A stretch of 64,000 nt of DNA from Macrostomum lignano (GCA_002269645.1 NIVC01000038.1:620001-684000); one strand, 5' to 3'; numbered from the stretch's first letter, positions 1 through 61,333 are shown. Numbers and translations: made by a program. Notes: generated by a model not told the origin, from the sequence alone.

Positions 1-3000
1 GTTATTTACCTGCCTCTGTAGTGCAGCAATAGACTGTCTGCGACCTTCGTCTTCACCAGCAATAGATGCTGCAGAAGATTCAACAGCGAATAGGCGTTGT
101 TTATTATCGCTTTCAGTCTGTTGCAGAAGCACCAGCTGCTGCTGATAGTTGTTTAACTGCTGTTGTAGTTCGACTGTTAGCTTTTGCTGTTCGCCTAAAC
201 CGTTCTCCTGTGCAGCAGAGAAGGATGCCTCTACAGCATTTATCCGTTCGGATACATTTGAAACAAAAATCTGATGCTTAGCATCTAAATTTCTCTGATA
301 CTCTTCAAGCTGCTGCTTCAAATCTTCTGCTTTTACTTGTTTAGTGACCGTCTTCAAGCTGGACTCGAGCTCATCAAGACGCTTTGTCACTGTTAAAGCA
401 AGTTTGCGTTGTTCAACTTCTGCTTCTTTGAGGACAGCCAGCTGCTGCTGGTAAGTGCTGAACTGGTCCTGCAATTCCACTGTTAACTTGGACTGCTCTG
501 ATGCATCCTGCGACTTGCTAGAAGTCAACAATGTCACGGTTGATTCAACAGTTGCAAGACGTTCAGACATGGATGTTGCAAGTTTACGCAGTTCAGCTTC
601 AGCTTCTTTAAGCTTTACGAGATCTTCAACCAGACTTTCCTTATCTGCTCCTAATGAGGTTATTGACGATTCCAATGCAAATAATCGATCAGAAACATTA
701 GCATTCACACTCTGCTGCTCCGTACTAAACTGTTTTAATAGCAATAACTGCTCTTGATAACCGGACAGTTGCTGCTCGAAAGTTTTAGCTATTTTGGAAC
801 GCTCAGCTGAGTTGTGCTCATTTGACAGAGTGGATGCAGTCTCAAGAGCACTTAGACGCTCAGAAACGGCCGAGGAAAGTTTTCGCTGCTCCGCTTCTGC
901 GTCTTTAAGCAACGCCAACTGCAGCTGATAGGCATTGAGTTGTTTTTCCAGATCGGATTTCTGCTTCGCTTGTTCCTTAACCTCAGCTTCTTTCGATAGC
1001 GCATTTGCCGAGACAGCAGCTTCTAGAGCAGTCAACTGTTCCGACAATTTTGCAACAAGCGTTTGCTTTTCAGACTCCTTGTCCTGCAATAGCTTCAGCT
1101 GATCTTCATAACCACTCAATTGATTTTTCATCTCTGCAATTAGTTCTTTTTGCATTTCGTCACTATCAAATTGCTTAACCAAAGCTACAGCCGACTTAGC
1201 CTCTACAGAAGCATTTTCAGAAATCTTCTCATTTGCATCGAGCCGCTCAGAGATGGCGCCTATTTGAAGTTGATATTCTTTTAACTTTTCCTGCAATACC
1301 GAAATCTCATTATTCTGCTTGGTAAGATCAGAATTTGGTTGTGAAGTCTCAGCAGACTCAACATTTACTGGCTTAGATTCGCCAAACGAATTCAGAGTCG
1401 ATTCAACCGACACTAAACGTTGCTGAACAGCTTCTACCAGTTTTTTCTGCTCAGCCTCAGCCTGGCGCAGTTGCTCCAACTGCTTTTGATAATCGCTCAA
1501 ATGTTGTCGCAGATCAATCATTGCTTTTCGCCGTTTACCATCCTCGCCGCCGTCTTTTAGGCTAGCTGCAGAGGAGAGCACAGCTTCAATAGCTAGCAAG
1601 CGTTCTGAGATGCCACTAATTGTAGTTACTTGTTCAGACTCTGCCAGCTGCATTTGCTGTAGCAGCCTGTTCTGATTATCTAAGTCACTGGCCAGCTTAA
1701 GGCGCTCAGCAGTTGCATTCTCATGATTAGATGAAGCCATGAGGTGTACAGATTCGATACGCTCCGACATAGAAACGCTGGATTTTCTCAGCTCGATTTC
1801 AGACTCTTGCAACTGCGACAGCTGCTTCTGACAGGTCTCCATTAGGTTGCGAAGTTCCAGAAGCTGCTTCTCTCTGTCTGAGTCACTATTGCGCAATCCA
1901 GTTTTCACCTCTGAGACTAATTTTTCTACAGCAATTAAACGTTTGACAAAGGAGTCATCTGTCTCGATTTGTTGTACATCTGCCTGTTTCAACAAGTCAA
2001 TCTGTCTCTGATAGTTGACAAGATTCTGTTGCAAATCAGATATAAGCTTTTGCTGGGCAACAGCATCATCATTTTGCTGAGTAGATGACGATGAGGCTAG
2101 CTTAGATTCGACCACATCTAGTCGATCAGATACTGTGGCAGTCAGCTTTCGTTGTTCAGCTTCCACTTGTTGAAGCTGTGATACTTGATCTTTTAACTCG
2201 CCTAGTTGATGTCGAATCACATCGGAAATTTTCTCGCCCTCATTGCTCTTATCATCTTGCTTTCTCGTGCTCGTAGCAGATGACATTGACGTCTCTAAGC
2301 TGCTTAAACGTTTCGCAATGGCGGTTACCAGCTCTTGGTGTCCAGAATCAGTCTGCCGCAGCAATTCAAACTGGTTCTGATGCTGCTTCAACTGCTCATT
2401 GAACTCTTTCATCAAATTACTTCGATCCTTGTTTTCATTTGATTCGTTTATTGTGGCAGATTCTACAGACGATTCTAAAGTAGTCAAGCGACCAGACAAA
2501 GAAGTGGTGGATTCTCGCTGTTCATCACCATCTTTGCGCAGCTGTGCCAACTGCTTCTGGAAATCGGCCATTTGCTGTTGCATATCCTGCTGCATCTTGT
2601 CTTGATTCTCCCTAGAGGCTTTCTCAATCGCAGTGAGCCGATCAGCAACACTCGCAGCATTCTTTTTCTGCTCAGAATCTGCTTCTTTAAGCGACACAAT
2701 CTCCTGGCTATTGTCATTTAACTGCTGTTGAATCTTTACCGTCAAAGTTTGATAGATTGTATCACCTTCGCTTGGTTTGACAACTGATTCAGTTGAAGAG
2801 GCTTTTGGAGGCATTTTTTCAATCGCAATAAGACGCTCGGATATGTCCGACGTCTGCTTGTTTAACTTCGACTCAGAATTCATTAAAGCAGTTAGCTGCT
2901 TCTGCTGCTTCTCTAATTGCTGCTGAAGTAGCTCCGCAAGCTTCTGGCGTTCTTTATCACTTTTCTGCTCAACCGAATCTAACCGTTTGGCCACCAAAGC

Positions 3001-4763
3001 TTCGCTTTTTTTCTGTTCTGAACTGGCTTTCTGCAAAAGCAGTATCATGCTTTTATGCTCACCTATGTCACGCTGCAAGTCTAATAAGGTCTGCTGCTGC
3101 TGCTTCTCAGCAATGGCAGACTCAGATGTTGAGCCTTCAATTAATACCAAGCGATTATTAGTATCAGTGACAAGCGACTTCTGCTCCAATAGTGTCTTCT
3201 GCAACAATGATAGCCGGTTTTCATACTCGCCCAACTGCTCTTTAACATCGACGGCCAGTTTTAAACGCTCTTTTTCAGCATCTTGCTGAGCACGCTGTTG
3301 CTCTGACACCGACTCAGATAGCGACTTCTCCGCTTTTTCAACGGTATCTAACTGATTAACAGCAGTTGCGATATGCTTAGCTTGCTCAGCTGCATGTTTT
3401 TTTAACGACGTTAACTGTTTCTCATGCTCGTTCCACTTCTGCTGACTACGCATTCTTTCATCGCTAACCCGTTGCGTCACAATGTCCATACGCCCTGACA
3501 GTTCCTTCAACATCTGTTGTCGAAGTTCGCCTGCCAAACTCAACTGCGCCTTCTCCAATTTACTAATCCTATCCGACATTGACGAGGTGAACTGCAGCTG
3601 ATCCGCATCTGCTTGACGTAAAACAGCAATTTGACGCTCAATTTCTGTGGAATTATTCTCGTCTGTAGAATCCGAACCGACCACAACTTGGCTATTAGTC
3701 TGTTGAGCTAATCGCTGCAATAGCAGCTTTCTCTGCGCCTCATCATTCTCCCTCTGTTGGGCCAGCAGGTTCAACATGCTACGCATCTCTGTCAGCTCTT
3801 GATTCCAGCGCAGCTCCATGTTGGCAACAATTTTCGAATCGCAGCATCCTTGTTGACCGCCGACTGCATCTAGCGGAACTCCAGTGGAAGTGTGCGCAGT
3901 GGTACCATTGCTATTGCGCAGTGCAGCAAGAATCGGTGACAATACGTACCACCAGACAGTTAGCAAAGCTAGCGGAAGAAATATTAGCAAACACAACAGC
4001 AATAGCAGAGTCGAACTAGAACAGAAACACCACGAGCTTTTGCGTTGAACATTCCGATAATGCTGCTGTCTAGTGACAGAAACCGCCGCAGACCTAGACG
4101 ATGACACAGCAGTAACTGAATCTTTAACTGCCGATATTGCAGAAACCAGCGGAGCCAATACAAACTGAGCAGTCGCTTTTGCCAAATTGGCCGAGAAAGC
4201 TACTGCGGTGAGCAAACCGGAGACTATCTTTTGTTTAGTATTTGCCAGCATAGTTCTACTTGTTGTTGTTGTTGTTGTTGCTGTTCTAACAGTTGACATG
4301 GTAGTCCTACTACTCAAACTAGAATTGTAAGCGTAGTCTGGTTGGTATCGAGCACCTTCATAGTATTGCCTGCTCAGAGTGGCCTCAACCGTGCCTCTGT
4401 CTCCCTGGTGATCCTCATCGTCACTGCCATCATCATCATATTCATGAGCAGCATCTCCCGCTGTCAACGTATCGCCGTCGGCAGTTCGCAGCTTGAATCG
4501 GACAGATCGTCGAACATCAGAAGATGTCAACTTCAACGAAGCAACGCCGTGCAGCCGACAATCGACGTGGCCGCAGTGGACGCCGCCTTCGGCCCGGCAG
4601 CGCGATCTGAGCACACGATCGGACTCGCTGCTGCCGTGCAGCGACAGAGTTGACGCTGAAAATCTTCGACGCTCACGGATGCCAATGCCGCTGCTGCCGA
4701 CGCTGCTGCTGGCAGTCGAGGCCGACGAGGAGCCAACGATGCTGACGGGGCTGACTGGTGCAA
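1..4763 (-). CDS. SUN1: SUN1-like inner nuclear membrane protein, giant exon 5 (Ser-rich nucleoplasmic part, TM helix at ~3940-4012, >1300 aa luminal coiled coil); gene continues past the left edge, where the SUN domain is expected
   Basis: Acceptor ttgcag at 4765/4764, in phase with exon 4. No stop found in the many segments I translated; absence from the ORF track is consistent with an ORF running off the window. Translation includes TLLLLLCLLIFLPLALLTVWWYVL followed by Q/E/L/K heptads. A possible donor CAG|GTAAAT lies at position 10/9. The symbol rests on the N-terminal motif and topology; the SUN domain itself is not visible. Confidence 0.8.
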
Positions 4764-4861
4764 CTGCAATGTGGCGTTAGTGGGAATAAATTTATACTTC
4801 AAAATGCTTTGCAAGTTTGCATATGTAGTGCAGTGAATCAGGAATTAGGGCGTTAGTTAGA

Positions 4862-5296
4862 TACGCCAAACCTGGATTAAACGGGCGCCGAAACTGAATT
4901 AAGGGGCGCCGAAACTGAATTAAGGGGCGCCGAAACTGAATTAAGGGGCGCCGAAACTGAATTAAGGGGCGCCGAATCTGGATTAAGGGCGCTGAATCTG
5001 GATTAAGAGCGCTGAATCTGGATTAAGGGGCGCTGAATCTGAATTAAGAGGCCACCAAACCTGGATTAAGAGGTGCTGAATCTGGATTAAGAGGCCTCCG
5101 AACCTGGATTAAGAGACCACCGAATCTGGATTAAGAGGCCACCGAACCAGGAGTAAGGGGCGCTGAATCTGGATTAAGAGGCCACCGAACCTGGATTAAG
5201 AGACCACCGAATCTGGATTAAGAGGCCACCGAACCTGGATTAAGAGACCACCGAATCTGGATTAAGAGACCACCGAATCAGGATTAAGACACTTAA
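4862..5296. repeat. 21-22 bp tandem repeat (GGGGCGCCGAAACTGAATTAA drifting to GACCACCGAACCTGGATTAAGA) in SUN intron 4
   Basis: About 20 directly visible units. Confidence 0.95.
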
Positions 5297-5370
5297 TCCA
5301 AATTTTCGGATTTTCAAAATGACAATTCACAATCCAAACAAATTAAAAGTCAAAAACACGGATGACTCAC

Positions 5371-5948
5371 TGTTGAAAGGACTGGGCGAGCCAGCAAAAC
5401 AGCCAGCCGTGTTGCCAGGTGGGCTGTGCAAAGGTGATCGACTCAAATTCGGACTGCGCCAATTACGGTGCAGCAACTCGGTCTGATAGCTGCCGCTGGA
5501 AAGTAGTATATTAAGCAATCATAATCATTATGATTATTATTTATTCAACTACACTTTTAGCATAACAACAACACTATACTACTTAGCAGTAACCTTACCT
5601 GTAAGCGTAGGTGTAATTAGATTTGGGCGATCTGGAAAAATAAATATTAATATTAAATACATAAATGATCTAAAAACCATATACTACTACTAATTAGCTG
5701 TAGTAAGTAGTAAAAAACAACTCACACTTCGTGATAAAGTCTGTGATCGTTTGGGTTTAAGTAGGAAAATGTCTCATTCAGCGATGACAGCTCCTCGAAT
5801 CTATAAAAAAACACAAGTTGTTGCATCAATATTAGAGCTTATTTTGCCTTTATACTACTTTTTCGGGCTTGAAATAAGTAGTTAAAACAGCTTAAATGAA
5901 TTTCCAGACTTACGCTGAGGAGCCGTCAGGTGAACCGAAGGCTGACAT
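5371..5948 (-). CDS. SUN1: SUN1-like gene, coding exons 1-4 (5914-5948, 5726-5800, 5599-5631, 5371-5495)
   Basis: ATG at 5948. All junctions are GT-AG with consistent phases (2,2,2,1). Spliced product: MSAFGSPDGSSAFEELSSLNETFSYLNPNDHRLYHEVSPKSNYTYAYSGSYQTELLHRNWRSPNLSRSPL. It resembles the SUN1 N-terminal MRP motif (GYTYALSSSY...DSPRMSRRSL, recalled). Confidence 0.8.
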
Positions 5949-6749
5949 AAACCAGACACACTCGCGAAGTTTGCTGAAATTATCAGTTGTTATCATATTT
6001 GAACTACTTTTAGTAGTGAAAATGTGCTAAATGCGAAGATTAATTTATAATTAACTAAATTGATACGAGTCTGATTTTATCTGCGCAGCGGCTGTAATTA
6101 GCATTTGACCTTTTATTACACCCCCCCTGCTGAACCACTCCCGGGCACGCGCAATTAAATCTAAGCACCAAAGTCAATTACCGGTCCGACAAAATTTCAA
6201 TTAATAATAAAAATCTAATTGTCGCTTAATTAGGCCCTTTTTAAATTAAAAACAAGCAGGTGACTTCAAGTGAAGATAGGAATGATTTTTCAACCAACCA
6301 AAAAAAACAGGTTTTTATTTTCAAAATAAATAGAAGCAATAGAAGCTAGTCTAGAGAAAATCTAAACAGAAAATCACATATTTAAGCTTTTTATAATACA
6401 GTATAACAAGCAACAGGAGTACAGGACGGACCGAAAACATCGCTTGAGATCTTGAAGTTTTTGTTTCTTTGAAAAATAAAAACAGCAGTTTCTCGGTATT
6501 GTAAAATTACTGCAGATTATAAAAACATTTATTCTTATAGGAGAAAAATAAAAAGAAAAACTACATTAGGATACAAGAAAGCAAAATTGGATTTGATAAA
6601 TAAACATAATAGAAGTGTATCACAGCTTTAAACAAATTTTAGCAATCATGCTTATCGGCAGTTCCCACAGTAGTTATTATTAAAATTTAATTATGTAGAG
6701 ATTCCAATTCATAGATATTTATCTTTAATCTGTCTGATTAAAAGATTCT

Positions 6750-8045
6750 GACATTGGGTTCCCTGTCGGTGACCATTGTGTTTAGACTATTGAGTTCACT
6801 GTCAGTGACCATTGTGTTTAGACTATTGAGTTCACTGTCAGTGACCATTGTGTTTAGACTATTGAGTTCACTGTCGGTGACCATTGTGTTTAGACTATTG
6901 AGTTCACTGTCAGTGACCATTGTGTTTAGACTATTGAGTTCACTGTCAGTGACCATTGTGTTTAGATATTGAGTTCACTGTCAGTGACCATTGTGTTTAG
7001 ACTATTGAGATCACTGTCAGTGACCATTGTGTTTAGACTATTGAGTTCACTGTCAGTGACCATTGTGTTTAGACTATTGAGTTCACTGTCAGTGACCATT
7101 GTGTTTAGACTATTGGGTTCACTGTCAGTGACCATTGTGTTTAGACTATTGAGTTCACTGTCAGTGACCATTGTGTTTAGACTATTGGGTTCACTTCCAG
7201 TGACTGTCGTTTAGATATTGGGTTCACTGTCAGAGACCATTGTTTAGATATTGGGTTTCCTGTCAGAGACCATTGTGTTTAGATATTGGGTTTCCTGTCA
7301 GAGACCATTGTGTTTAGATATTGGGTTTCCTGTCAGAGACCATTGTGTTTAGATATTGGGTTTCCTGTCAGAGACCATTGTGTTTAGATATTGGGTTTCC
7401 TGTCAGAGACCATTGTGTTTAGATATTGGGTTTCCTGTCAGAGACCATTGTGTTTAGATATTGGGTTTCCTGTCAGAGACCATTGTGTTTAGATATTGGG
7501 TTTCCTGTCAGAGACCATTGTGTTTAGATATTGGGTTCAATGTCAGAGACCATTGTGTTTAGATATTGGGTTTCCTGTCAGAGACCATTGTGTTTAGATA
7601 TTGGGTTTCCTGTCAGAGACCATTGTGTTTAAATATTAGGTTTCCTGTCAGAGACCATTGTGTTTAGATATTGGGTTCACTGTCAGAGACCATTGTGTTT
7701 AGATATTGGGTTTCCTGTCAGAGACCATTGTGTTTAGATATTGGGTTCACTGTCAGAGACCATTGTGTTTAGATATTGGGTTCACTGTCAGAGACCATTG
7801 TGTTTAGATATTGGGTTTCCTGTCAGAGACCATTGTGTTTAGATATTGGGTTCAATGTCAGAGACCATTGTGTTTAGATATTGGGTTCACTGTCAGAGAC
7901 CATTGTGTTTAGATATTGGGTTCACTGTCAGAGACCATTGTGTTTAGATATTGGGTTTCCTGTCAGAGACCATTGTGTTTAGATATTGGGTTTCCTGTCA
8001 GAGACCAATTTTTAGCTATTGATTTCACTGACAGTGACCATTTGA
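6750..8045. repeat. 36-bp (left) to 35-bp (right) tandem minisatellite downstream of the LRRC34 stop
   Basis: Unit CCATTGTGTTTAGACTATTGAGTTCACTGTCAGTGA, about 36 copies, with no spacers. Confidence 0.97.
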
Positions 8046-8216: not shown

Positions 8217-8834
8217 TTAATTCAGCCGAAACCGCCTATCCTGCGGCACTTGATCTCCGTACACAGGTGCCGTGAACCTGTACAACCGGTAGTCCACATC
8301 CCTGTTCACCTGGGACAGGCACCAGCGATCGTCAACGCTGTAAGCTCGCACATCCGTGTCGTCCTCGCGCAAGCGACCGCTTGATCCCAGCAGTTCAGCG
8401 TACGCAGCTGCACAACTGGCATCCGTGAGGTCGTTGCCCCAGATGAAAAGCCGCTCCAGACTGGTGTTGTACTTGAGCGAATCCGCCACAGCCACCAGGC
8501 CGTCGCTTTTAATCTCGTTAAATTTGATAACCAAACAGCGCAGATTGGTGTTGGCGCCAATCAGTGCGCTAGCGATGCACTTGGCGCCGTCGCATTCCAG
8601 CCGGTTGTAGGACAGATCCAGCAGTTGCAGTGGCGTGTCGCGACACAGCACATTGGCAAGCACTTTGGCGCCGTCCCGGGTGATGCGGTTGCAGCTGAGA
8701 TCCAGCACCGTCAGGGCGCGGTTGGCAACAAGGCCATCGGCGATGCGGTTGGCGCCAAAGTCGCGCATCTCGTACTTGGCCAGATGAAGCTCGCGGAGGC
8801 TGCGGTTCTGGGCCAGCATCTCGCCCATGTGCAC
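8217..8834 (-). CDS. LRRC34: Leucine-rich repeat-containing protein 34, exon 2 (terminal)
   Basis: Acceptor ccgcag|GTG. Translation VHMGEML...LDLSCNRITRDG...LDLSYNRLE...LFIWGN...DTDV matches the recalled LRRC34 C-terminal half; RI-like LRRs. Confidence 0.92.
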   Translation of the reverse strand: MHMGEMLAQNRSLRELHLAKYEMRDFGANRIADGLVANRALTVLDLSCNRITRDGAKVLANVLCRDTPLQLLDLSYNRLECDGAKCIASALIGANTNLRCLVIKFNEIKSDGLVAVADSLKYNTSLERLFIWGNDLTDASCAAAYAELLGSSGRLREDDTDVRAYSVDDRWCLSQVNRDVDYRLYRFTAPVYGDQVPQDRRFRLN

Positions 8835-8856
8835 CTGCGGGTGAGGAGCGGGAACT

Positions 8857-10826
8857 GGGTTCAGGGCTGTGGTGATGATGGGTTCAGAGCTGTTGCGTTA
8901 GGGCTGTGGTTATTATAGCTTCAGGGCTGTGGTGATTATAGCTTCAGGGCTGTGGTGATGATAGCTTTAGGGCTGTGGTGATTATAGCTTCAGGGCTGTG
9001 GTGATGATAGCTTCAGGGCTGTGGTGATGATAGCTTCAGGGCTGTGGTGACGCTGGTTCAGGGCTGTGGTGACGATAGCTTCAGGGCTGTGGTGATTATA
9101 GCTTCAGGGCTGTGGTGATTATAGCTTCAGGGCTGTGGTGATTAAAGCTTCAGGGCTGTGGTGATTATAGCTTCAGGGCTGTGGTGATTATAGCTTCAGG
9201 GCTGTGGTGATTATAGCTTCAGGGCTGTGGTGATTATAGCTTCAGGGCTGTGGTGATTATAGCTTCAGGGCTGTGGTGATTATAGCTTCAGGGCTGTGGT
9301 GATTATAGCTTCAGGGCTGTGGTGATTATAGCTTCAGGGCTGTGGTGATTATAGCTTCAGGGCTGTGGTGACGATAGCTTCAGGGCTGTGGTGACGATAG
9401 CTTCAGGGCTGTGGTGATTATAGCTTCAGGACTGGTGATTATAGCTTCAGGGCTGTGGTGATTATAGCTTCAGGACTGGTGATTATAGCTTCAGGGCTGT
9501 GGTGACGATAGCTTCAGGGCTGTGGTGATGATAGCTTCAGGGCTGTGGTGACGATAGCTTCAGGGCTGTGGTGATTATAGCTTCAGGACTGGTGATTATA
9601 GCTTCAGGGCTGTGGTGATTATAGCTTCAGGACTGGTGATTATAGCTTCAGGGCTGTGGTGATTATAGCTTCAGGACTGGTGATTATAGCTTCAGGGCTG
9701 TGGTGACGATAGCTTCAGGGCTGTGGTGATGATAGCTTCAGGGCTGTGGTGACGATAGCTTCAGGGCTGTGGTGATTATAGCTTCAGGACTGGTGATTAT
9801 AGCTTCAGGGCTGTGGTGATTATAGCTTCAGGACTGGTGATTATAGCTTCAGGGCTGTGGTGATGATAGCTTCAGGACTGTGGTGATTATAGCTTCAGGG
9901 CTGTGGTGATGATAGCTTCAGGGCTGTGGTGATGATAGCTTCAGGGCTGTGGTGATGATAGCTTCAGGACTGTGGTGATGATATAGCTTCAGGGCTGTGG
10001 TGATTATAGCTTCAGGACTGTGGTGATGATAGCTTCAGGGCTGTGGTGACGATAGCTTCAGGGCTGTGGTGATGATAGCTTCAGGACTGTGGTGATGATA
10101 GCTTCAGGGCTGTGGTGACGATAGCTTCAGGACTGTGGTGATTATAGCTTCAGGGCTGTGGTGACGATAGCTTCAGGGCTGTGGTGATGATAGCTTCAGG
10201 GCTGTGGTGATGATAGCTTCAGGGCTGTGGTGACGATAGCTTCAGGGCTGTGGTGATGATAGCTTAAGGGCTGTGGTGATGATAGCTTCAGGGCTGTGGT
10301 GACGATAGCTTCAGGGCTGTGGTGACGATAGCTTCAGGGCTGTGGTGATGATAGCTTCAGGGCTGTGGTGATGATAGCTTCAGGGCTGTGGTGATGATAG
10401 CTTCAGGACTGTGGTGATGATAGCTTCAGGACTGTGGTGATGATAGCTTCAGGACTGTGGTGATGATAGCTTCAGGGCTGTGGTGATGATAGCTTCAGGG
10501 CTGTGGTGATGATAGCTTCAGGGTTGTGGTGATGATAGCTTCAGGACTGTGGTGATGATAGCTTCAGGGCTGTGGTGATGATAGCTTCAGGGCTGTGGTG
10601 ATGATAGCTTCAGGACTGTGGTGATGATAGCTTCAGGGCTGTGGTGATGATAGCTTCAGGGCTGTGGTGATGATAGCTTCAGGGTTGTGGTGATGATAGC
10701 TTCAGGGTTGTGGTGATTATAGTTTCAGGGCTGTGGTGATTATAGCTTCAGGACTGTGGTGATGATAGCTTCAGGGTTGTGGTGATGATAGCTTCAGGGC
10801 TGTGGTGATTATAGCTTCAGGGCTGT
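8857..10826. repeat. 23-bp satellite (TATAGCTTCAGGGCTGTGGTGAT, with 21-bp variants) at the acceptor end of the LRRC34 intron
   Basis: About 85 copies; the array starts about 20 nt from the 3' splice site. Confidence 0.97.
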
Positions 10827-11575
10827 AGTAGTGATATATGTTCAATGGTGGCTGTGAAGACACTGCATTTAGGGCTAGTAGTGATAATTGAAATAAAGTA
10901 GGTAGCAGAGATTAGAAAGCCGGAGATTAGACCCAGTCAGTCAGTACAGAAATGTCCATTAGATCAACTGTGACGAGTTGAAAACTGTGCAAATCGATAT
11001 AAATATAGGAGCTAACAATGCCAAGAAGTACATTTATGAGATTGACCAGTGTAAGTCTTATTGAGCACTTGACTAGAATTCATATGGACTATTTGATTTG
11101 ATTTTATTGATTTCTCTTCCATATAAGTAGTGCACTTGTCTGACTTCACATTGCGTAGGCGGCCTCTACAACCTCCCACTGTCGCGCACAGCACATAAGA
11201 TTTCACTCAGCACGTCAACCCACACACTTGCACTGACACTAGTTAGACAAAACTGCTACAAATGCTTATAAAGACTATAAGACTGTACCCAAGACAGGAA
11301 ACGCCTTTAAACTATCTGTCTTAGTTAACGAGTTCTATATTATACTCGTATTTGACTGTATGGCCTCTACATGCACCTTTTCGTGGCAATTGGAATTGCA
11401 TTTGCCAAAATTTTAACTTCAATGCCCAAATGGACTGCAAAAAAGATAAATACTCATCACTTGTCAAGAGAAATTTAGAAATCAGATGAATGATTATACT
11501 TAATGGTGCCACTACATCTTAATCGTTGCTGCCACTACTCTTACTGAACCTGCAGTGTATCTAGCTAATCAATTA

Positions 11576-12465
11576 CCTGAATCTGAACCCGCTACCTGAA
11601 TATTTTATCTGAACCCCTACCTGAATATTCTATCTGAACCCCTACCTGAATCTTCTATCTGAACCCCTACCTGAACATTCAGTCTGTCTGAACCCCTACC
11701 TGAACCTTCGGTCTGTCTGAACCCCTGCCTGAACCTACCCTGAACCCCTACCTGAACCTTTTATCTGAACCCCTACCTGAACCTTCTATCTGAATCTGAA
11801 CCCCTACCTGAACCTTCTATCTGAACCCCTACCTGAACCTTCTATCTGAACCCCTACCTGAACCTTCTATCTGAACCCCTACCTGAACCTTCTATCTGAA
11901 CCCCTACCTGAACCTTCTATCTGAACCCCTACCTGAACCTTCTATCTGAACCCCTACCTGAACCTTCTATCTGAATCTGAACCCCTACCTGAACCTTCTA
12001 TCTGAATCTGAACCCCTACCTGAACCTTCTGAATCTGAACCCCTACCTGAACCTTCTATCTGAACCCCTACCTGAACCTTCTATCTGAACCCCTATCTGA
12101 ACCTTCTATCTGAACCCCTACCTGAATCTTCTATCTGAACCCCTACCTGAACCTTCTATCTGAATCTGAACCCCTACCTGAACCTTCTATCTGAACCCCT
12201 ACCTGAACCTTCTATCTGAATCTGAACCCCTACCTGAATCTTCTATCTGAAACCCTACCTGAACTTTCTATCTGAACCCCTACCTGAACCTTCTATCTGA
12301 ATCTAAACCTTACCTAAACCTTCTATCTGAATCTGAACCCCTACCTGAACCTTCTATCTGAAACCCTACCTGAACATTCGGTCTGTCTGATCCCCTACCT
12401 GAACATTCGGTCTGTCTGAACCCCTACTTGAACCTGAACCTACCCTGAACCCCTTACCGAACCTT
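11576..12465. repeat. 25-bp satellite (CTGAACCCCTACCTGAACCTTCTAT, with 31-bp variants) at the donor end of the LRRC34 intron
   Basis: About 33 copies; the array ends about 20 nt from the 5' splice site. Confidence 0.97.
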
Positions 12466-12483
12466 CATCAATGCGGCACTCAC

Positions 12484-13122
12484 AGTGGTCTCCTCCTGCT
12501 GAGTCCACAGCAGCGGCCTATTAACATTGATACCACGCAGCGAATCGTTATACTTGAGCACAGTTGACAGAGCAATCACGGCATTAATTTTCAAATCGCA
12601 ATCGCCGAGATCTAGAAACTCCAACGTAGCATTAACCTGCAGCGCCTCAGCAAACAGCATCCCACCAGCATCATTGATTTTATTGCCAGCCAAATTCAGC
12701 TCCAACAAGGTCTGGTTGGTGTGCAAAGATTTAGCAATAGCCTTGGCGCCGGCCTCTCCAACATTGTTGCACATCAGGTTGAGCATGGTAATAGTTTTAT
12801 TACTACTCAACATATCGGCAATGGCTTCGGCACCAGAGTCTCCAATGGAATTATAACGCAGATCCACGCAGACAAAAATGGTGCTGGAACGCAGAGTCCG
12901 GCACAGCACTGCAGCATCGGCATCAACCAGACGAATATTTCTAGTATTCGACAGCTTATTATTGGCGCACAATTTCAAATCGAATGTTTCAACATCGTCA
13001 TCAAATGCAGATTCATCTTTGAGACGTTGGAGCACGTCGAGAACGAACGCATTGGCAGATAATTGGCTGGCTTTGCAATTCTCAATATAGCTGACAACTG
13101 TGTCATATATTGTTTCAGCCAT
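12484..13122 (-). CDS. LRRC34: Leucine-rich repeat-containing protein 34, exon 1
   Basis: ATG at 13122 (the ORF-track start at 13125 is GTG). Donor ACT|gtgagt, phase 0. Motifs LEFLDLGDCDL and NRPLLWTQQEETT|VH match recalled LRRC34 LDLGDCDL and NRPILYSEQEESTVH. Total protein 418 aa. Confidence 0.92.
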
Positions 13123-13396
13123 CACTGCGCTTGCATGATAAAAATGGGATTATTTTTTAAGTCATTTCTCTGGTGTCTGTCTGTGACTCTGTGTGCATGA
13201 ATGCATCTGGCAAGTTGTCTGATAATGTTGATTTAAGTGCAAAATGGTGCACTTCTTGCCTCGAATAAAAAAACAAATAATTCTATCAATACAATGCAAA
13301 TAAAATTACTTGAAGACATTAAGGTCAAGCTATCCAAGAATCATACTGCAAGGTCAAGATTATTGGGATTCATACACATCTAAAATCTAGCTAACC

Positions 13397-19887: not shown

Positions 19888-20510
19888 ATGCCACGGCGAA
19901 ATTCGAGAGGTGAGGCATCCGAAGACCCGCCAGACGAGCTTCTGCCAGGTTTGGACGACCTCGGCCAGAACATCAGGCCCCAGGATGTGAGAACGATGAT
20001 GGCAGCTCCGCAGCAGCAGATGGAGCGGCCGGTAAGCAAGTCTGTTAAGATTGTAAAGTACACGCCCAGCCAGGACATCCACGTCTGGCTCGCCGCGTTT
20101 GAGCAACACTGCGAGATGGAGCGTATTGAAGATCCGATCGAGATGAAGCAGCACCTCGTTGCGAGTCTGGATCTGGCAACTTCTTATCCGGCTCTGCTGA
20201 GTATGCACTTCCCACGCTATGCTGGCTACGAGGAGGTCAAGCAGCAATTGATCGAGAGATTTGCCCGCCATGGTAGCGCTGATGAATATCGAGAGCTGCT
20301 GAGGCGCCGTCAGCAAGGCAAGAACGAGTCAGCAGAAGAGTACGCTGATGCCCTGCGCACCTTAGGAGAGCAAGCGTACCCTCGAATGCACCCTGAATAT
20401 CGAGAGCGAGAGCTGGCTGATCAGTTCTTAGCTGGCATCAGGACACCAGATCTGCGCGAGCGGCTCTATTGGGTCCGCCCAAACAATCTGTTGGCCGCTA
20501 TTCGAGCCTG
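19888..20510 (+). pseudogene. Gypsy gag (Retrotrans_gag-like), fused by deletion to the end of RT
   Basis: YTPSQDIHVWLAAFE...YEEVKQQLIERF...RQQGKNESAEEYADALRTLGEQAYP...QFLAGIRTPDLRERL. Confidence 0.8.
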
Positions 20511-22247
20511 TGCCACAGTCCGTTACTCAACTGAGACAATTCCTAGGCCTCGCCAATTACTACCACAAGTTTGTCAACGGCTATGCTGGAGTTGCTGCGC
20601 CGTTGCATGCCCTGACTCGAAAGGACATCGGCAGCCTGTGGCAGCATTGGACTGATTAGCACCAGGTAGCGTTCGACACGTTGAAGAAGAAGTTGTGTTC
20701 GACTGAAGTTCTCGCTCTGCCCGAGTTTAACTCAGATCCTGATGTGAAGTTTGTCCTAGACACTGATGCCTCAGACATTCGCATAGGCGCTTGTCTTGGA
20801 CAACGGCAATCCGACGGCGTCGAGCGCCCAATTGCATTCTTTAGCCGGAAACTTCGTGATCCTGAGAAGCGCTACACGGTTACGAAGAAAGAGCTGCTTG
20901 CAATCGTGGACGCTAGCGACATTTCCGTCATTATTTAATCGGCAAGAAGTTTGAAGTTCGTTCCGACCATTGGGCCTTGCTGTGGTTGCTGAACCAGACG
21001 CAGGTCACAGGCATCTTGGGCCGTTGGATTGAGCGACTGAGCGAGTTCCGCTTCCAGCTTCACCATCGCAAAGGCAATCACCACGCCAACGCTGACGCCC
21101 TGTCAAGACGCCCGGAGACACCACCGGTTGACTTCAGACATGGCCGACTGCTGGAGCACCCCGGTTCTGCAGCCCGACACGGTGATGACACCAGCCTGGA
21201 GCCGGACTTGGACACCACACGTGAGGCCACTGCGAGAGCAGCCAGCACGAAGAAGGTTCACACTCGCAACAAGGAGGCCGAAACTGCCCTGGCCAAAGAC
21301 CTGGAGGCCACTGCGCCAGCAGCCCTTCAGCACGACGACCATTGCTGCAGTCAACGCCTGGAGACCGGTTTGGACAGCAACCCGGAGGCCACTGATACCT
21401 CAGCCCTCCGCAGAGATGCCCACGCCGGTTGCCGTTACTTGGAGATTCGCCCAGACAAGACCTCGGAGGCCACTGCTGACGTAGACCTCCGTGATGATGT
21501 CCAAGACTGCGGATCTCGGAACCTGGAGACGTCCATGGACCACGACTCAGAGGCCACTGAACAAGCAGCCCTCCTGATGACGGCCCACAACGCAGATCCA
21601 GAGCAGCAATGTAAGTTCAACCCCCGGAGTTTTGCGCTGAGAGTTCTCGCCGTGTTGACAGAGGCCAGACTCTCGCGACGGCTGCAAGGTCAACGCTCTG
21701 TCCCCCGAGCCGATAGACAGCTGCTCATCGCCTGTGCGGAAAGTCGAGTCCCCCGTTGCAACACCGCCCGGTGCTGGAAAAGACTCACCCAATGACGATG
21801 ATGATCGAGCCGACAGCTACGGCTGCCTGTGAGGAGGCGTGCTTCACGTGTTGCGTCTCGCCCTACAGCCAAGAGTCGCCTGGGCTGTGCAGTGGAGGCA
21901 AGTGCACTGCTCCAGCTGCAGAAATTCCTGTCAAGAGAGCGATGATGAGAACTTCGAAACGAGATCAGCGATCGTACGCCGACGTCGTGAGACAAAGTCC
22001 CTCGGAGCGACCTAATCCTGACGCCGACATGACGGAGTCGCGTGATCAACTGCGACCCAAAGAAGCGGAGACTGCGGGAGTCATGAACCCTCAGCCATGC
22101 CGCGCCGTGCTCACTTATTTTCTGAGGTTGCCGATGACGCGGCAACAGTTTGTCGACGCGCAGTGCACCAACCAAGCTATAAGCTACGTGCTCAACTTGG
22201 TCGAGAACAAAGCCCCGAAGCCTAAGTTAAGCCTAAGCCTTGGCTGA
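20510..22247 (+). pseudogene. Gypsy pol remnant: RT C-terminus, RNase H, long repetitive tether
   Basis: PVPQSVTQLRQFLGLANYYHKFV; FVLDTDASD; KKELLAIV; VRSDH; HANADALSR. Stop near 20655 and frameshift near 20915. Confidence 0.88.
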
Positions 22248-23015
22248 AGCATGCGCGTCACTCGGGGACAATTTTGGCCACAGACAGTTTAAATTAAAGT
22301 TCTTCTGTGTCAATAGAAACGGACTTTGTTTGAAATGAATTTCTGCAAGCTCTGATATTTCTTAAAGTGTTTGAAGAAGCTTGTTTCTTTTGAATAAGAC
22401 TTTTTTTTCAAAATAGGAGGTAAAATGGTGTAGAACGGCTTTGCTCTGGTCAGTCTATTCCGTTGCGCTAGTAAAACCTGAGGCGCTTGAAATACTGTTC
22501 GACATCGAGGTAGCACATCGGCATCTCCCACAGTCAGAAATCGGGCCCGGAAAACATCGGAATGAAGATTTGGTGACTGCAGCATCGTCCAGCGAAGAAT
22601 TAAATGTTCCTTGTCACCATTTGTACTTTGTAGTAACGAAAACTAATATGTCGAGACGGAAAAGATAGAAGAGGCATCGTGTATTTTTATAGCAGCGAAG
22701 TAGCTGGCTGCTATAGTTAAACATAAAGAAAGATTCGCCATAGACCATGGAGTTAAAGTTCATACACAACACTCAGATTTGGATGGACAGAACAAGCAAG
22801 AGAGCTGAGAGTGCGGCTGCTGCAGCACTCAGTCAAACCCAATTTCAACCATCAAACTCACTTTCGAGCGGCTGCTGCCTGTCGGGCCTTTGGACTTCTG
22901 CAATGCATGTAAGATCTTTATTTACGCTTGTACCAATATTAGTCTCTGTTTCTGTTGTTTCGTTTAAATACTTTACTGAACAATTCGCGAACTTTGTGTA
23001 CCTCACCCTGCTCCA

Positions 23016-24178
23016 CTAGGATCCAGCAGATTCAGCAGCCTTTATGCAGCACTGATCTCCTTTTGTTTGGTCAGCGACTGTCAGTACGAGAAACTGGACG
23101 ACTTCCCACTCACGATTGCTCAAAGCAGATTTGACAACCTTGATGCAGCACGGATCTCTTTTTGTTTGGTCAGCGACTGTTTGGACAAGAAACTTGAAAA
23201 CTTTCCACTGACAGTTGCATGCAGCAGTTTCAGCTGCAGCGATGCAACACTGATCTTTGTTTGGTCAGCGACTCTCTGGACAAGAAACTCGAAGATTTCC
23301 CACTGACGGTAAAGTGCAGCAGTTTCAGCTGCCTTGACTTTCTGACCATTGCTCGCAGCAGATTTAGCAGCCTCGATGCAGCAGTGATCTCTTTTTGTTT
23401 GGTCAGCGACTGTTTGAATGAGAAACTGGACGACTTCCGACTCACCATTTTTCGCATCAGATTTAGCAGCCTCGATGCAGCAATGATCTCTTTCTGTTTC
23501 ATCAGCCACTTTGTTAACAAGAAACTTTACGACTTGTATCTGACCATTGCTTGCAGCAGATCTAGCAGCCTCGATGCAGCAGTGATCTCTTTTTGTTTGG
23601 CTAGTGACTTTGTCGACGAGAAACTCGACGACTTCCCATTCACGATTGCTTGCAGCAGATTTGGCAGCCTTGATGCAGAAGTAATATCTTTTTGTTTGGT
23701 CATGGACTGTGTCGAAGAGAAAATTTACGACTTCTAACTGACCAATATTTCCAGTATACTTCGCAGACTTGACGGAGAAGTCATCTCTTTTTGTATGGTC
23801 AGCGACTGTCGACACGAGAAACTTGACGACTTCCCAAACACGATTGGATGCTGCAAATTCGGCAGCATCGATGCAGCCCTGATCTCCGTTTGTCTGGTCA
23901 GCGACTGTGTGCACCAGAAACTCGAAGGCTTCCCACTGACCTTTAACTGTAGCAAATCTTGCAGCCTCGATGCAGCAGTCATCTCTTTTTTGTTTATCAA
24001 CGACACTAAGCGCAAGAAACTCGAGGGCTTCTAACTGCCCCTCGCTTGCAGCAAATACTGAATAGCTTTTGCAGAAGTTATATATGTCGTTTTCTGTTTG
24101 TTGAAAAGTCAGATAACCTCTGAGTACCTCGACATCTCCTTTTTTGGCAGCCTTGTCAGCAGTAATTTGTTGGCTCAT
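23016..24178 (-). pseudogene. Ankyrin-like 33-aa repeat protein (about 12 repeats), frameshifted near 23258
   Basis: Repeats CIEAAKSAASNGQWEVVEFLVxxVADQTKRDHC. A 4-nt deletion shifts the frame, the repeats resume in another frame and end at TAG 23016. The lesion could be an assembly error. Confidence 0.75.
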
Positions 24179-24861
24179 TCTACTTAGCACGCTGGTGAGT
24201 GATTTCCACTAGAAGGTAAATATTTCCCTGTTGATGGGTGAGTTGCGTTTTGAATTAAATTAACTTGAAGAAAGGGGAGGCACAGGGAGGCTGAAAGAGT
24301 GGAGGGTGGCTTCACTGCTTTAATGTTTGCAACGAATTTCAAATCATGAAATTTGATGAATCTTACTGATGCTCCATGCTGTCAGAGCGGCAGGTGTTTC
24401 AAAGGTTTGTGCAGCCAGTTGCCAGAAAGATTTTACCGCCTCATCTATCAGCTGCCCTCCCTTTTGCAGCCTCTGGCGAGGCCAACCACCCCAGCCGTAG
24501 CAACCGAAACTTCTCTCCTGAGCATGAGCGCTGAGTCCGTCGCCTTCGCCTCTGTGCACCCAGCATGGCAACGGAGAGGTAGTGACTGCAGCGGCCACCC
24601 CAAGCTGTACTTGATGAGGCTGAGCTGACCCATTGTGCCTCAGTGCAGTCTGAGATCTTCAAAATATATAAAATGCTGCTCAGTCCCTCACCTGTACTCG
24701 CAGCTCTAGCCAGTTGGTTGGCGAGCAGCTCGGCTCTCTGTCCCTCTCTCTCTGTCTCACCCTCACTGCCGACCCGCCACTCCTTCCAGTGCGAATTGAG
24801 ATAAAGGACTCAGGTGCGCTGCTAGCGCCTCCACGTTGATGCCGTCAAGATGGCACCCGTC

Positions 24862-35222: not shown

Positions 35223-35253
35223 CAGCCAGCTGTGAGTGTGCTGTGGCCCCGCT

Positions 35254-47600: not shown

Positions 47601-48170
47601 CTCCCTTCCTATCTCCCTTCCTATCTCCCTTCCTATCTCCCTTCCTATCTCCCTTCCTATCTCCCTTCCTATCTCCCTTCCGATCTCTCTTCCTATCTCC
47701 CTTCCTATCTCCCTTCCTATGTCTCTTCCTATCTCCCTTCCTATCTCCCTTCCTATCTCCCTTTCTATCTCCCTTCCTATCTCCCTTCCTATCTCCCTTT
47801 CTATCTCCCTTCCTATCTCCCTTCCTATCTCCCTTTCTATCTCCCTTCCTATCTCCCTTCCTATCTCCCTTCCTATCTGCCTTCCTATCTCCCTTCCTAT
47901 CTCCCTTCCTATCTCCCTTCCTATCTCCCTTTCTATCTCCCTTCCTATCTCCCTTTCTATCTCCCTTTCTATCTCCCTTCCTATCTCCCTTTCTATCTCC
48001 CTTCCTATCTCCCTTCCTATCTCCCTTTCTATCTCCCTTCCTATCTCCCTTTCTCTCCCTTCCTACCTTTTTCCCAATCCCCATTCTATCTCTCTTCTAT
48101 CTCTCTTCCTATCTGGCCTGTCTCCCTTGGTATCTCTCTTCCTATCCCTTCTATTTCCCATTTCCATTCC
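41618..48170. repeat. Local tandem duplication (unit A 41618-44180, unit B 44181-~48170); each unit has two arrays of the 12-bp CTATCTCCCTTC satellite
   Basis: Both units start CTAACGTTTGGTTGCTGTG and share long near-identical unique segments. Arrays lie at ~42230-42520, 43415-44180, 45110-45680 and 46535-48170. Confidence 0.93.
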
Positions 48171-57400: not shown

Positions 57401-57607
57401 GCTACAGCAATAGGAGCGCCAAAGCTACAGCAATAGGAGCATCAAAGCTACAGCAATAGGAGCGCCAAAGCCACAACAAGGGGGCACCAAAGCTACAGCA
57501 ATAGGAGCGCCAAAGCTACAGCAATAGGAGCGTCAAAGCTACAGCAATAGGAGCGTCAAAGCTACAGCAATAGGAGCGCCAAAGCTACAACAATAGGGGC
57601 ATCAAAG
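51461..57607. repeat. 6.1-kb satellite of ~21-23 bp units (GGGGCGCCAAAGCTACAGCAATA) with higher-order structure
   Basis: The same variant block restarts at 51705, 53291, 54651 and 55827. Confidence 0.98.
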
Positions 57608-60738: not shown

Positions 60739-60980
<242 letters not shown>

Positions 60981-61016
60981 GCTGTCCATCAGAGCCGACC
61001 CCGCTCCCAACCGCAG

Positions 61017-61254: not shown

Positions 61255-61333
61255 GTGAGTGCTTTTTGAAGACTGCGGGGATGGGAGTGACTGACTCTGT
61301 GTTCATTTCTGCTCCGCGGTGAGCAGCATCCGC

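What the first reader, a model, noticed from the sequence alone, without database searches (positions are those of the whole stretch)
1..5948. SUN1-like LINC protein with a giant (>1300 aa) luminal coiled coil encoded by one exon
Seen: an MRP-like N-terminal motif, one TM helix and at least 1310 residues of coiled coil, still open at the window edge, within one 4.76-kb exon. Known: SUN1/SUN2 luminal regions are a few hundred residues and their coiled coil is thought to span the perinuclear space. Inference: this protein could span a much wider nuclear envelope lumen, or act as a specialised (e.g. germline or sperm) linker.
Basis: partly seen in the sequence, partly recalled or inferred. Interest (0 to 1): 0.75.

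Follow-up and report, generated by a model that had tools for sequence, protein, structure and literature searches.

The report
Giant-stalked SUN nuclear-envelope protein, flatworm
The window holds most of a Macrostomum lignano gene for a normal-looking SUN (LINC-complex) nuclear-envelope protein whose stalk inside the envelope lumen is about four times longer than in other sampled SUN proteins, giving a natural test of whether SUN length sets nuclear-envelope spacing.

Summary
On the minus strand, five GT-AG exons (5996-5914, 5800-5726, 5631-5599, 5495-5371, 4763-1) read in frame for 1693 aa and stay open at the window edge.

The window is an exact piece of M. lignano assembly Mlig_3_7, contig NIVC01000038.1. 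The annotated product there (P0151, 1930 aa) is identical to my spliced model over 1681 aa. It continues for 249 aa into a Sad1_UNC domain (Pfam E=1.2e-33; human SUN2 structures E=3e-42). The predicted SUN domain therefore exists.

Exon 5 is 5171 nt in full. The stretch between the membrane helix and the SUN domain is about 1390 aa. The median is 315 aa in 105 of the 148 closest SUN representatives out of 1.84 billion proteins; the longest other reliable values are about 650-720 aa.

The stalk is not one featureless coil. It is at least 21 diverged tandem units of about 58 aa, each with seven heptads plus a Ser/Thr/Asn-rich linker. No other database protein shares it. A sister M. lignano SUN gene has ordinary length (1003 aa).

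The motif called "MRP-like" is a real SUN1-type N-terminal motif but lies outside Pfam's MRP domain. Function, expression and localisation remain untested.

The parts
5914..5996 (-). Exon 1. The candidate start ATG is at 5996. The public annotation starts 5'-partial at codon 13.
   Evidence: The ATG and the open frame are also present in the duplicate locus L001. The true start and any trans-splice site are not established.
5726..5800 (-). Exon 2
   Evidence: AG/GT borders, in frame. Translation is identical to P0151.
5599..5631 (-). Exon 3. Encodes SPKSNYTYAYS, the first half of the SUN1-type N-terminal motif.
5371..5495 (-). Exon 4. Encodes GSYQTELLHRNWRSPNLSRSPLHS..., the second half of the motif (SPN[ML]SR). 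The motif ends near 5423.
   Evidence: The bipartite motif YTY[AS]-x(8-35)-PN[ML][STK]R occurs in 23 of 149 SUN proteins.
1..4763 (-). Window part of exon 5. The full exon is 5171 nt; 408 nt lie beyond the window edge. It encodes the rest of the nucleoplasmic domain, the membrane helix, the whole luminal stalk and, outside the window, the first part of the SUN domain.
4558..4599 (-). Cys/His motif CRAEGGVHCGHVDC in the nucleoplasmic domain, possibly metal-binding.
   Evidence: Within the SUN set examined, it is shared only with the ordinary-length M. lignano paralogue P0003/P0004. Its function is inferred only.
4105..4185 (-). Weakly hydrophobic stretch before the membrane helix (model aa 299-325).
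   Evidence: Kyte-Doolittle hydropathy 1.40-1.48. The comparison with the membrane-associated stretches of SUN1/2 rests on my own knowledge.
3940..4023 (-). Single transmembrane helix (model aa 353-380). Type II orientation: N-terminus nucleoplasmic, C-terminus luminal.
   Evidence: Hydropathy up to 2.87. The N-terminal flank is RQQHYRNVQRKSSW. A C-terminal SUN domain fixes the luminal side.
64..3648 (-). Twenty-one tandem units of about 58 aa (model aa 478-1672). Each has a helical core of about 50 aa (seven heptads, consensus er.Kl..dLqqQL..yQ.QL.lLqqaeaEQ.kl...vSeRL.avEs) plus a variable Ser/Thr/Asn-rich linker.
   Evidence: Iterated HMM on the protein itself gives 21 domains at E=7e-12 to 1e-21. 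Mean pairwise identity is 30%. Heptad periodicity. No DNA-level tandem repeat was found in 1-4763.

Best explanation
Identity. This is the 5' five-sixths of a Macrostomum lignano gene of six exons. The product is 1930 aa as annotated, or 1942 aa if translation starts at the ATG at 5996. It encodes a canonical SUN1/2-type SUN-domain protein, the inner-nuclear-membrane half of a LINC bridge.

Shown here:
- a nucleoplasmic N-terminal domain of about 350 aa with the conserved SUN1-type motif;
- one type II membrane helix;
- a luminal helical stalk of about 1390 aa;
- a C-terminal SUN domain that keeps the cysteine that makes the SUN-KASH disulfide in human SUN2, the internal disulfide pair, and a stretch aligning to the KASH lid.

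The stalk is a tandem array of at least 21 old, diverged copies of a seven-heptad helical module joined by short Ser/Thr/Asn-rich linkers. The module is detectable in no other protein, including the sister M. lignano SUN gene of ordinary length. The giant form therefore most likely arose after a lineage-specific SUN duplication, by internal amplification of one coiled-coil module.

Inferred mechanism. Three chains form a parallel trimeric coiled coil that is interrupted at the linkers, giving a jointed rod. Cysteines cluster at its base (C412, C413) and neck (C1712, C1753, C1755) and may staple the trimer. Fully straight, the rod would measure about 156 nm (cores only) to 206 nm (all residues). 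That is several times the 30-50 nm perinuclear space. In a normal envelope it must lie tilted, zig-zagged or along the membrane. It would then act as a long, slack, extensible tether between lamina or chromatin and KASH partners, able to hold the bridge where the two membranes move far apart.
For: Gene model and identity with annotated protein P0151. The window is an exact match to Mlig_3_7 NIVC01000038.1, and the downstream exons are mapped. The assembly belongs to M. lignano. SUN domain: Pfam E=1.2e-33; human SUN2/SUN1 structures E=3e-42 to 4e-40 with TRC, CWAFQG and YTC.YRFRVHG conserved. N-terminal motif shared with mollusc, insect and vertebrate SUN1-like proteins. Membrane helix and charge asymmetry. 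Repeats, heptads and helices. Outlier length: TM-to-SUN linker 1385-1390 aa against median 315 and 95th percentile 638 in the 105 of 148 nearest SUN representatives where a membrane helix could be located; the nominal runner-up (848 aa) is inflated by extra hydrophobic segments. No other protein shares the stalk, by word-indexed search of 5.8 billion clusters and exhaustive phmmer of 1.84 billion representatives. The repeat HMM finds nothing in the other SUN proteins. The paralogue P0004 (1003 aa, same assembly) is the reciprocal best SUN-domain match at 57.6%. A second genomic copy (L001, 96.75% nt identity including introns) keeps the same open frame and length. It shows 24 synonymous and 49 non-synonymous differences, omega about 0.59, binomial p=0.028 for an excess of synonymous changes.
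Against: Nothing here shows trimerisation, nuclear-envelope localisation, KASH binding or expression pattern. I examined no RNA reads myself. The single-exon structure rests on the public annotation, which according to Wudarski et al. 2017 (PMC5730564) was built from RNA-seq. The AlphaFold2 monomer model has modest confidence (pLDDT 70.9, pTM 0.44) and breaks helices at only some linkers. Omega of 0.59 between the two copies indicates only mild constraint over a short divergence. Deleting about 300 aa of the UNC-84 linker did not change envelope spacing in C. elegans (PMC4615189), so stalk length may have little functional consequence. Only the 150 best SUN matches were inspected for length. 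About 1200 more distant SUN-like hits were not.
Confidence: 0.8

Rival explanations
1. The protein is the same, but the stalk is compact. Adjacent helical units fold back on each other at the linkers into antiparallel bundles, as in spectrin-type repeats or the autoinhibitory three-helix bundle of SUN2. The effective span then stays near 30-50 nm, and the extra repeats serve as an unfoldable reserve or as binding platforms rather than as length.
For: Short Ser/Thr/Asn/Gly/Pro-containing linkers separate most units. AlphaFold2 breaks the helix at three of the linkers in a 273-aa sample. The Foldseek matches of that model are antiparallel helical bundles such as BAR and F-BAR domains.
Against: No Foldseek match is significant: none at E<=0.001 and TM-scores of 0.2-0.5. 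Monomer predictions of coiled coils commonly fold back artefactually. The heptad register is continuous through each 50-aa core. One linker was predicted as continuous helix. Pfam HTH_SUN2, the model for the SUN2 bundle, does not match.
Confidence: 0.3
2. The protein is a specialised, non-canonical SUN protein of male germ cells, comparable in role to mammalian SUN3, SUN4 or SUN5. It would act at a sperm-specific structure such as a nucleus-shaping or head-tail junction, not as a general nuclear-envelope bridge.
For: A conventional-length SUN1/2-type paralogue (P0004) exists in the same genome and could cover the housekeeping role. That paralogue's likely transcript is flagged 'Sexual_biased' in the eLife 2016 tables, so SUN genes are germline-regulated in this animal. 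From my own knowledge, Macrostomum sperm are structurally elaborate.
Against: No expression data for the giant gene were found. Mammalian testis-specific SUN proteins have short N-termini and short stalks. This protein has the full SUN1-type N-terminal motif and a long nucleoplasmic domain.
Confidence: 0.2
3. The giant stalk is an artefact of annotation or assembly, or the gene is a decaying duplicate with no function.
For: Mlig_3_7 is highly repetitive and redundant. Omega between the copies is 0.59, a mild constraint.
Against: A 5171-nt exon without a stop codon is kept in two separately assembled loci that differ at about 3% of bases. The two proteins align over 1930 columns and differ only by one residue at the annotated start. 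The repeat units are only about 30% identical and TRF finds no DNA tandem repeat in the exon, so assembly slippage is unlikely. Synonymous changes are in excess (p=0.028).
Confidence: 0.05

Closest known systems
Vertebrate SUN1 (human SUN1; structures 5YWZ, 6R15, 8AU0)
   Same: Type II inner-nuclear-membrane architecture. N-terminal 'YTYA.S.SY ... MSRR' motif. Luminal trimer-type helical stalk made of units joined by flexible linkers (PMC10320395). C-terminal KASH-binding SUN domain (E=3.5e-40 to 4e-40).
   Different: The human SUN1 luminal region is about 460 aa, with two coiled-coil units (PMC10320395). Here it is 1562 aa with at least 21 units. Pfam MRP, the SUN1 nucleoplasmic domain, and HTH_SUN2 match vertebrate SUN1-like proteins but not this protein.
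Human SUN2 (structures 4FI9, 4DXT, 4DXR, 3UNP)
   Same: Best structural-sequence match of the SUN domain (E=3e-42). The aligned equivalents of the KASH-disulfide cysteine, the internal disulfide pair and the KASH-lid stretch are present.
   Different: SUN2 lacks the YTYA motif; that statement rests on my own knowledge. Its stalk is about 300 aa, against about 1390 aa here.
C. elegans UNC-84
   Same: An invertebrate SUN1/2-type protein with a comparatively long luminal linker. It has been used to test the hypothesis that SUN length sets envelope spacing (PMC4615189, PMC4107780).
   Different: From the residues cited in PMC4615189 (deletion 556-861, leaving 60-80 linker residues), the UNC-84 linker is a few hundred residues and is not an obvious repeat array. 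The protein here has a linker several times longer, built of regular heptad repeats.
M. lignano paralogue P0004 (PAA65290.1, BOX15_Mlig001943g4, 'SUN domain-containing protein', 1003 aa)
   Same: Same genome. Reciprocal closest SUN domain (57.6%). Shares the Cys/His motif DR.LRS.CR..GG.HCGHV.C and a similar membrane helix.
   Different: Its luminal linker is ordinary at about 335 aa. It has no copy of the 58-aa repeat and lacks the YTYA motif within its first 200 aa.
CLIMP-63 / CKAP4 (comparison from my own knowledge; not tested here)
   Same: A type II membrane protein whose luminal coiled coil is thought to set the width of a membrane-bounded lumen, the ER sheet.
   Different: It has no SUN domain and no KASH coupling, and a much shorter luminal coil. 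It is a functional analogy only, not a relative.

Membership tests
SUN-domain proteins (Sad1/UNC-84 family, SUN1/2 type) | C-terminal Sad1_UNC (SUN) domain | tested here: met
   Pfam PF07738 at P0151 residues 1797-1928, E=1.2e-33. P0151 is this gene's own product. The domain lies outside the window, encoded by the last 408 nt of exon 5 plus exon 6.
SUN-domain proteins (Sad1/UNC-84 family, SUN1/2 type) | Single-pass type II topology, with the N-terminus nucleoplasmic and the SUN domain luminal | tested here: met
   One strong hydrophobic helix at aa 353-380 with basic residues on its N-terminal flank. This is a sequence prediction only.
SUN-domain proteins (Sad1/UNC-84 family, SUN1/2 type) | Helical coiled-coil stalk between the membrane and the SUN domain | tested here: met
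   Heptad periodicity 0.587 against 0.186 +/- 0.028 in shuffles. AlphaFold2 predicts helices. A helix (VRLHRQLAEYRRRLVAVERL) lies about 20 residues upstream of the SUN domain.
SUN-domain proteins (Sad1/UNC-84 family, SUN1/2 type) | KASH-binding residues: the cysteine for the SUN-KASH disulfide, the internal disulfide pair and the KASH lid | tested here: met
   In the alignment to human SUN2, TRC, GECWAFQG and YTCLYRFRVHG are conserved and a lid-length stretch is present. Actual binding was not tested.
SUN-domain proteins (Sad1/UNC-84 family, SUN1/2 type) | Trimerisation, inner-nuclear-membrane localisation and a KASH partner | not testable with these tools
   These need biochemistry and imaging. 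No multimer prediction was available.
SUN1 subtype (N-terminal signature) | Conserved N-terminal motif PK[TS][DN]YTY[AS].S.SY followed by PN[ML]SR (vertebrates: NTGYTYALSSSY ... SPRMSRRSLR) | tested here: met
   The window encodes SPKSNYTYAYSGSYQTELLHRNWRSPNLSRSPLHS. YTY[AS] occurs in the first 200 aa of 30 of 148 SUN relatives, and the bipartite form in 23 of 149.
Pfam MRP (PF09387; nucleoplasmic domain of vertebrate SUN1) | Match to the Pfam model at or above its gathering score | tested here: not met
   No family matched at E<=1 for the first 500 aa. The model matches vertebrate SUN1-like P0017 and P0028 at residues 65/97 to 353/371, downstream of the YTYA motif. It matches none of the seven invertebrate SUN proteins tested (six with the YTYA motif plus P0005), nor the vertebrate-type P0065.
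Pfam HTH_SUN2 (PF18580; helix bundle preceding the SUN domain) | Match to the Pfam model | tested here: not met
   Only Sad1_UNC was reported for P0151 at E<=0.1. Vertebrate P0017 does match HTH_SUN2.

The most novel reading that the evidence does not exclude
The giant SUN protein forms straight or nearly straight trimeric rods of 150-200 nm. In the cells that express it, perhaps germ cells or mechanically stressed cells of this soft-bodied worm, the perinuclear space is several-fold wider than the canonical 30-50 nm, or the LINC bridge reaches far beyond it. That would be a natural gain-of-length experiment showing that SUN stalk length can set nuclear-envelope geometry.
Probability: 0.15. 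Interest if true: 0.85.

Novelty: new variant of a known kind. Interest (0 to 1): 0.6.

Why it matters
A long-standing idea holds that the luminal coiled coil of SUN proteins acts as a ruler for the 30-50 nm gap between the two nuclear membranes. Shortening UNC-84 in C. elegans did not narrow the gap (PMC4615189). The converse case, a much longer natural SUN protein, has not to my knowledge been examined.

This gene supplies one. Its stalk is about four times the usual length. The worm is transparent, regenerates, and already has transgenesis and RNAi (PMC5730564, PMC11075559). An ordinary-length sister SUN gene in the same genome can serve as an internal control.

The stalk is also a clean example of a long rod built by amplifying a single seven-heptad module. 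That could inform the design of coiled-coil spacers.

Tried and rejected
1. The first homology search, with the N-terminal 600 aa, found nothing. This was a false negative caused by the 8000-candidate word filter. The full 1693-aa query recovered P0001 at 97% identity.

2. Pfam MRP as support for the 'MRP-like' motif was negative. It is also irrelevant, because the MRP model starts downstream of the motif and is vertebrate-centred.

3. P0002 (2451 aa, 24 matched stretches) looked like a second giant SUN protein. It is 24 tandem copies of the last SUN-exon peptide with no stalk, most likely a gene-model artefact from another organism.

4. P0105 appeared to have an 848-aa linker. That region contains further hydrophobic segments, so my simple rule for the last membrane helix overestimates its linker.

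5. The repeat HMM run against 148 other SUN proteins, with their reversed sequences as control, gave one 13-bit hit. The module is therefore not detectably derived from a generic SUN coiled coil.

6. Foldseek of the AlphaFold2 monomer model against the PDB gave no significant match. It does not inform on quaternary structure.

7. Expression class. The supplements of eLife 2016, Front Zool 2015 and Nat Commun 2017 list two other SUN transcripts (3880 nt and 1570 nt) but none long enough for this gene, and one file was truncated in storage.

8. Literature on SUN proteins in Macrostomum or flatworms: the two searches requiring 'SUN domain' together with Macrostomum or flatworm found no paper, and none of the ten listed results of a broader planarian/schistosome search mentions SUN domains.

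9. It would have resampled the same neighbourhood of SUN domains.


Full report
**What is in the sequence.**
The minus strand of window 1-4776 is free of stop codons for 1592 codons and runs off the left edge. Upstream of it lie four short exons with canonical GT..AG borders: 5996-5914, 5800-5726, 5631-5599 and 5495-5371. They join exon 5 (4763-1) in frame and give a 1693-aa model beginning at an ATG at 5996.

The product has three parts.
- The first 352 aa are Ser/Thr/Ala-rich.
- One strongly hydrophobic helix follows at aa 353-380, with Arg/Lys on its N-terminal side.
- The remaining 1313 aa are Leu/Gln/Ser/Glu-rich, with five prolines after aa 430 and three cysteines.

**Where the window comes from, and the missing C-terminus.**
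A search with the whole model found one protein, P0001: 1929 aa, 97% identical, with Pfam Sad1_UNC. Its 90% cluster holds a second member, P0151 (1930 aa). P0151 is 100% identical to the window's exon 5 over 1587 aa and identical to my spliced model from residue 13 over 1681 aa.

P0151 is encoded on NCBI assembly GCA_002269645.1, contig NIVC01000038.1. Window 6000..1 is an exact 6000-nt match to that contig. The accession belongs to Macrostomum lignano Mlig_3_7 (Wudarski et al. 2017, PMC5730564).

In that contig exon 5 continues 408 nt past the window edge, for a total of 5171 nt. It ends at a GT inside the SUN domain, just after ECWAFQ. An 835-nt intron and a 342-nt final exon follow.

P0151 carries Sad1_UNC at 1797-1928 (E=1.2e-33). 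In the near-identical copy P0001 this region aligns to human SUN2 and SUN1 crystal-structure chains at E=3e-42 to 4e-40. The cysteine that forms the SUN-KASH disulfide in SUN2 (TRC), the internal disulfide pair (CWAFQG, YTC.YRFRVHG) and a lid-length stretch are all conserved. The residue roles are from my knowledge of the SUN2-KASH structures.

**The N-terminal motif.**
Pfam found nothing in the first 500 aa at E<=1. I compared the protein directly with the 148 closest SUN-domain representatives.
- The sequence SPKSNYTYAYSGSYQTELLHRNWRSPNLSRSPLHS (exons 3-4) matches a conserved bipartite signature, PK[TS][DN]YTY[AS].S.SY, then 10-15 residues, then PN[ML]SR.
- The signature occurs in SUN1/2-like proteins of a gastropod (Gigantopelta), an abalone and a cricket, and many unnamed relatives (names).
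- Vertebrate SUN1-like proteins carry a more widely spaced form (MDFSRLH..NTGYTYALSSSY ... SPRMSRRSLR).
- YTY[AS] occurs in the first 200 aa of 30 of 148 relatives, far above my rough chance expectation of well under 1% per protein.

The Pfam MRP model matches vertebrate SUN1-like proteins only downstream of this motif. It matches none of the invertebrate proteins that carry the motif. The motif is real and SUN1-type, but 'MRP-like' is the wrong label.

**The stalk is a repeat array.**
An HMM seeded on five similar stretches and iterated on the protein itself finds 21 tandem units in the window. The spacing is 46-69 aa, typically 56-62, with E=7e-12 to 1e-21 per unit. Two degenerate partial units follow in the part beyond the window edge.

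Each unit has a core of about 50 aa, with consensus er.Kl..dLqqQL..yQ.QL.lLqqaeaEQ.kl...vSeRL.avEs. Hydrophobic positions follow an unbroken 3-4 spacing for seven heptads. A variable Ser/Thr/Asn-rich linker follows the core.

Further properties:
- The units are old. Mean pairwise identity is 30%, and TRF finds no DNA tandem repeat in 1-4763.
- Hydrophobic periodicity peaks at 3.5 residues, about 14 standard deviations above shuffles.
- AlphaFold2, run on a single sequence of 273 aa, predicts four long helices. It breaks at three linkers and reads through a fourth (pLDDT 70.9).
- Foldseek on that model finds nothing significant.
- Cysteines are nearly absent from the rod but cluster at its base (C412, C413) and neck (C1712, C1753, C1755). 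This suggests, by inference only, disulfide stapling at both ends.

**How unusual it is.**
An exhaustive phmmer search used the last 1184 aa (stalk plus SUN domain) against 1.84 billion representatives. It gave 2672 hits at E<=1e-3. Apart from P0001 itself, the best 150 match mainly or only the SUN domain, with some extending up to about 300 aa upstream. P0002, which showed 24 matched stretches, is an artefact-like concatenation of one SUN-exon peptide.

| Measure | This protein | Other SUN representatives |
|---|---|---|
| Total length | 1929 aa (P0001) | median 729, maximum 1481 (148 proteins) |
| Last strong hydrophobic segment to SUN domain | 1385 aa | median 315, 95th percentile 638 (105 proteins with a membrane helix located) |

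The nominal runner-up at 848 aa is inflated by further hydrophobic segments. The next reliable values are about 650-720 aa. The stalk also has the highest heptad score and the lowest Pro/Gly content of those examined.

Human SUN1 has a luminal region of about 460 aa (PMC10320395). Here it is 1562 aa. At 0.1485 nm per residue, the cores alone would span about 156 nm and the whole linker about 206 nm. The perinuclear space is 30-50 nm (PMC4615189).

**Origin.**
M. lignano also has an ordinary SUN1/2-type gene, P0004: 1003 aa, three near-identical copies, named 'SUN domain-containing protein' in UniRef. P0004 and the giant are reciprocal best matches in the SUN domain: 57.6% against at most 49% to any other protein. 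They also share a Cys/His motif found nowhere else in the set. The repeat HMM does not match P0004 or any other SUN protein. The most economical reading is a lineage-specific duplication followed by amplification of one coiled-coil module.

**Is it real and functional?**
A second locus (L001, NIVC01001521.1) is collinear with window 7028..1 at 96.75% nucleotide identity, introns included. It has the same gene neighbours, an LRR gene upstream and a CD36 gene downstream. That copy keeps the same open exon and the same number of repeats. The two copies differ by 24 synonymous and 49 non-synonymous changes, omega about 0.59. Synonymous changes are in excess of the neutral expectation (p=0.028).

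M. lignano is a recent polyploid with about 180 Mb of duplicated blocks at >=95% identity. That explains the pair of loci. According to the genome paper, the annotation was built from RNA-seq. I examined no reads myself.

**Mechanism, and what remains inferred.**
Established from sequence: SUN-family identity, topology, helical heptad stalk, repeat architecture and outlier length.

Inferred: parallel trimer formation, hinging at the linkers, nuclear-envelope localisation and KASH coupling.

A straight rod cannot stand perpendicular in a normal envelope. I therefore favour a jointed, slack tether that can accommodate large or variable membrane separation. The main rival is a compact fold-back arrangement. 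I could not find expression data for this gene. I found no literature on SUN proteins in flatworms.

**Verdict.**
Observation confirmed and interpretation supported. The protein is already in public databases as an unnamed prediction. It represents an undescribed, extreme variant of a well-known family, in an experimentally tractable animal.

Noticed in passing
window 4864-5289: A 22-bp minisatellite (about 20 copies, consensus CGCCGAATCTGGATTAAGAGGC) fills most of intron 4 of the SUN gene. The duplicate locus L001 has a related array at 79-88% identity.
   Followed up: partly
window 6753-8042: A 35-bp array of 37 copies lies between the LRR gene and the SUN gene. The homologous stretch in L001 (8955-9222) is only about 270 bp, so array length differs strongly between the two copies of the locus.
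   Followed up: partly
window 8217-13125 (-): An RNI-type leucine-rich-repeat gene (Pfam LRR_6, E=1e-17 to 3e-19) sits directly upstream of the SUN gene, as in L001 and L003, where it is a 421-aa product. Its intron holds 23-bp x84 (8900-10826) and 25-bp x32 (11581-12435) minisatellites.
   Followed up: partly
window 4558-4599 (-): The Cys/His motif CRAEGGVHCGHVDC lies in the nucleoplasmic domain. Among 149 SUN proteins it is shared only with the ordinary-length M. lignano SUN paralogue (SECRRQGGKHCGHVEC). It may be a lineage-specific metal-binding knuckle.
   Followed up: partly
window 35236-36861 (+): An intronless 541-aa CD36-family ORF (Pfam CD36, E=2.5e-122). A different CD36 gene (616 aa) lies just downstream of the SUN gene outside the window (L003 14230 onward), so the family is locally duplicated.
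   Followed up: partly
window 23120-24190 (-): A 356-aa ORF made of 33-aa ankyrin repeats (Ank_2, E=3e-14). Its DNA is itself a 99-bp tandem array at 72-76% identity.
   Followed up: partly
window 51463-57609: A 6.1-kb satellite of a 23-bp unit (GGAGCGCCAAAGCTACAGCAATA, about 267 copies, 86% matches) with extreme AT skew of about +0.6.
   Followed up: no
window 42300-48150: Several arrays of a 12-bp unit (TCTCCCTTCCTA), up to 136 copies, with strong strand asymmetry (GC skew down to -0.74). They create long spurious ORFs in all three plus-strand frames.
   Followed up: no
window 60724-61269 (+): A rhodopsin-family GPCR fragment (7tm_1, E=2.9e-18, with a DRY-type motif LDRYWSV). It is immediately preceded, in the same ORF, by a (GTCT)n microsatellite translated as (CLSV)n. 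This is probably an exon next to an intronic microsatellite.
   Followed up: partly
window 19888-22250: A GC-rich block (57%) with overlapping 160-270-aa ORFs on both strands. The two ORFs I scanned (19888-20655 and 20977-21795) have no Pfam match. It may be a degraded retroelement.
   Followed up: partly
database protein P0002 (not in the window): A 2451-aa database protein consists of about 24 tandem copies of a peptide of about 100 aa containing the last SUN-domain exon (..NWGNPEYTCVYRVQ). It is likely a gene-model or assembly artefact in another organism. It ranks second in SUN searches and could mislead length surveys.
   Followed up: partly
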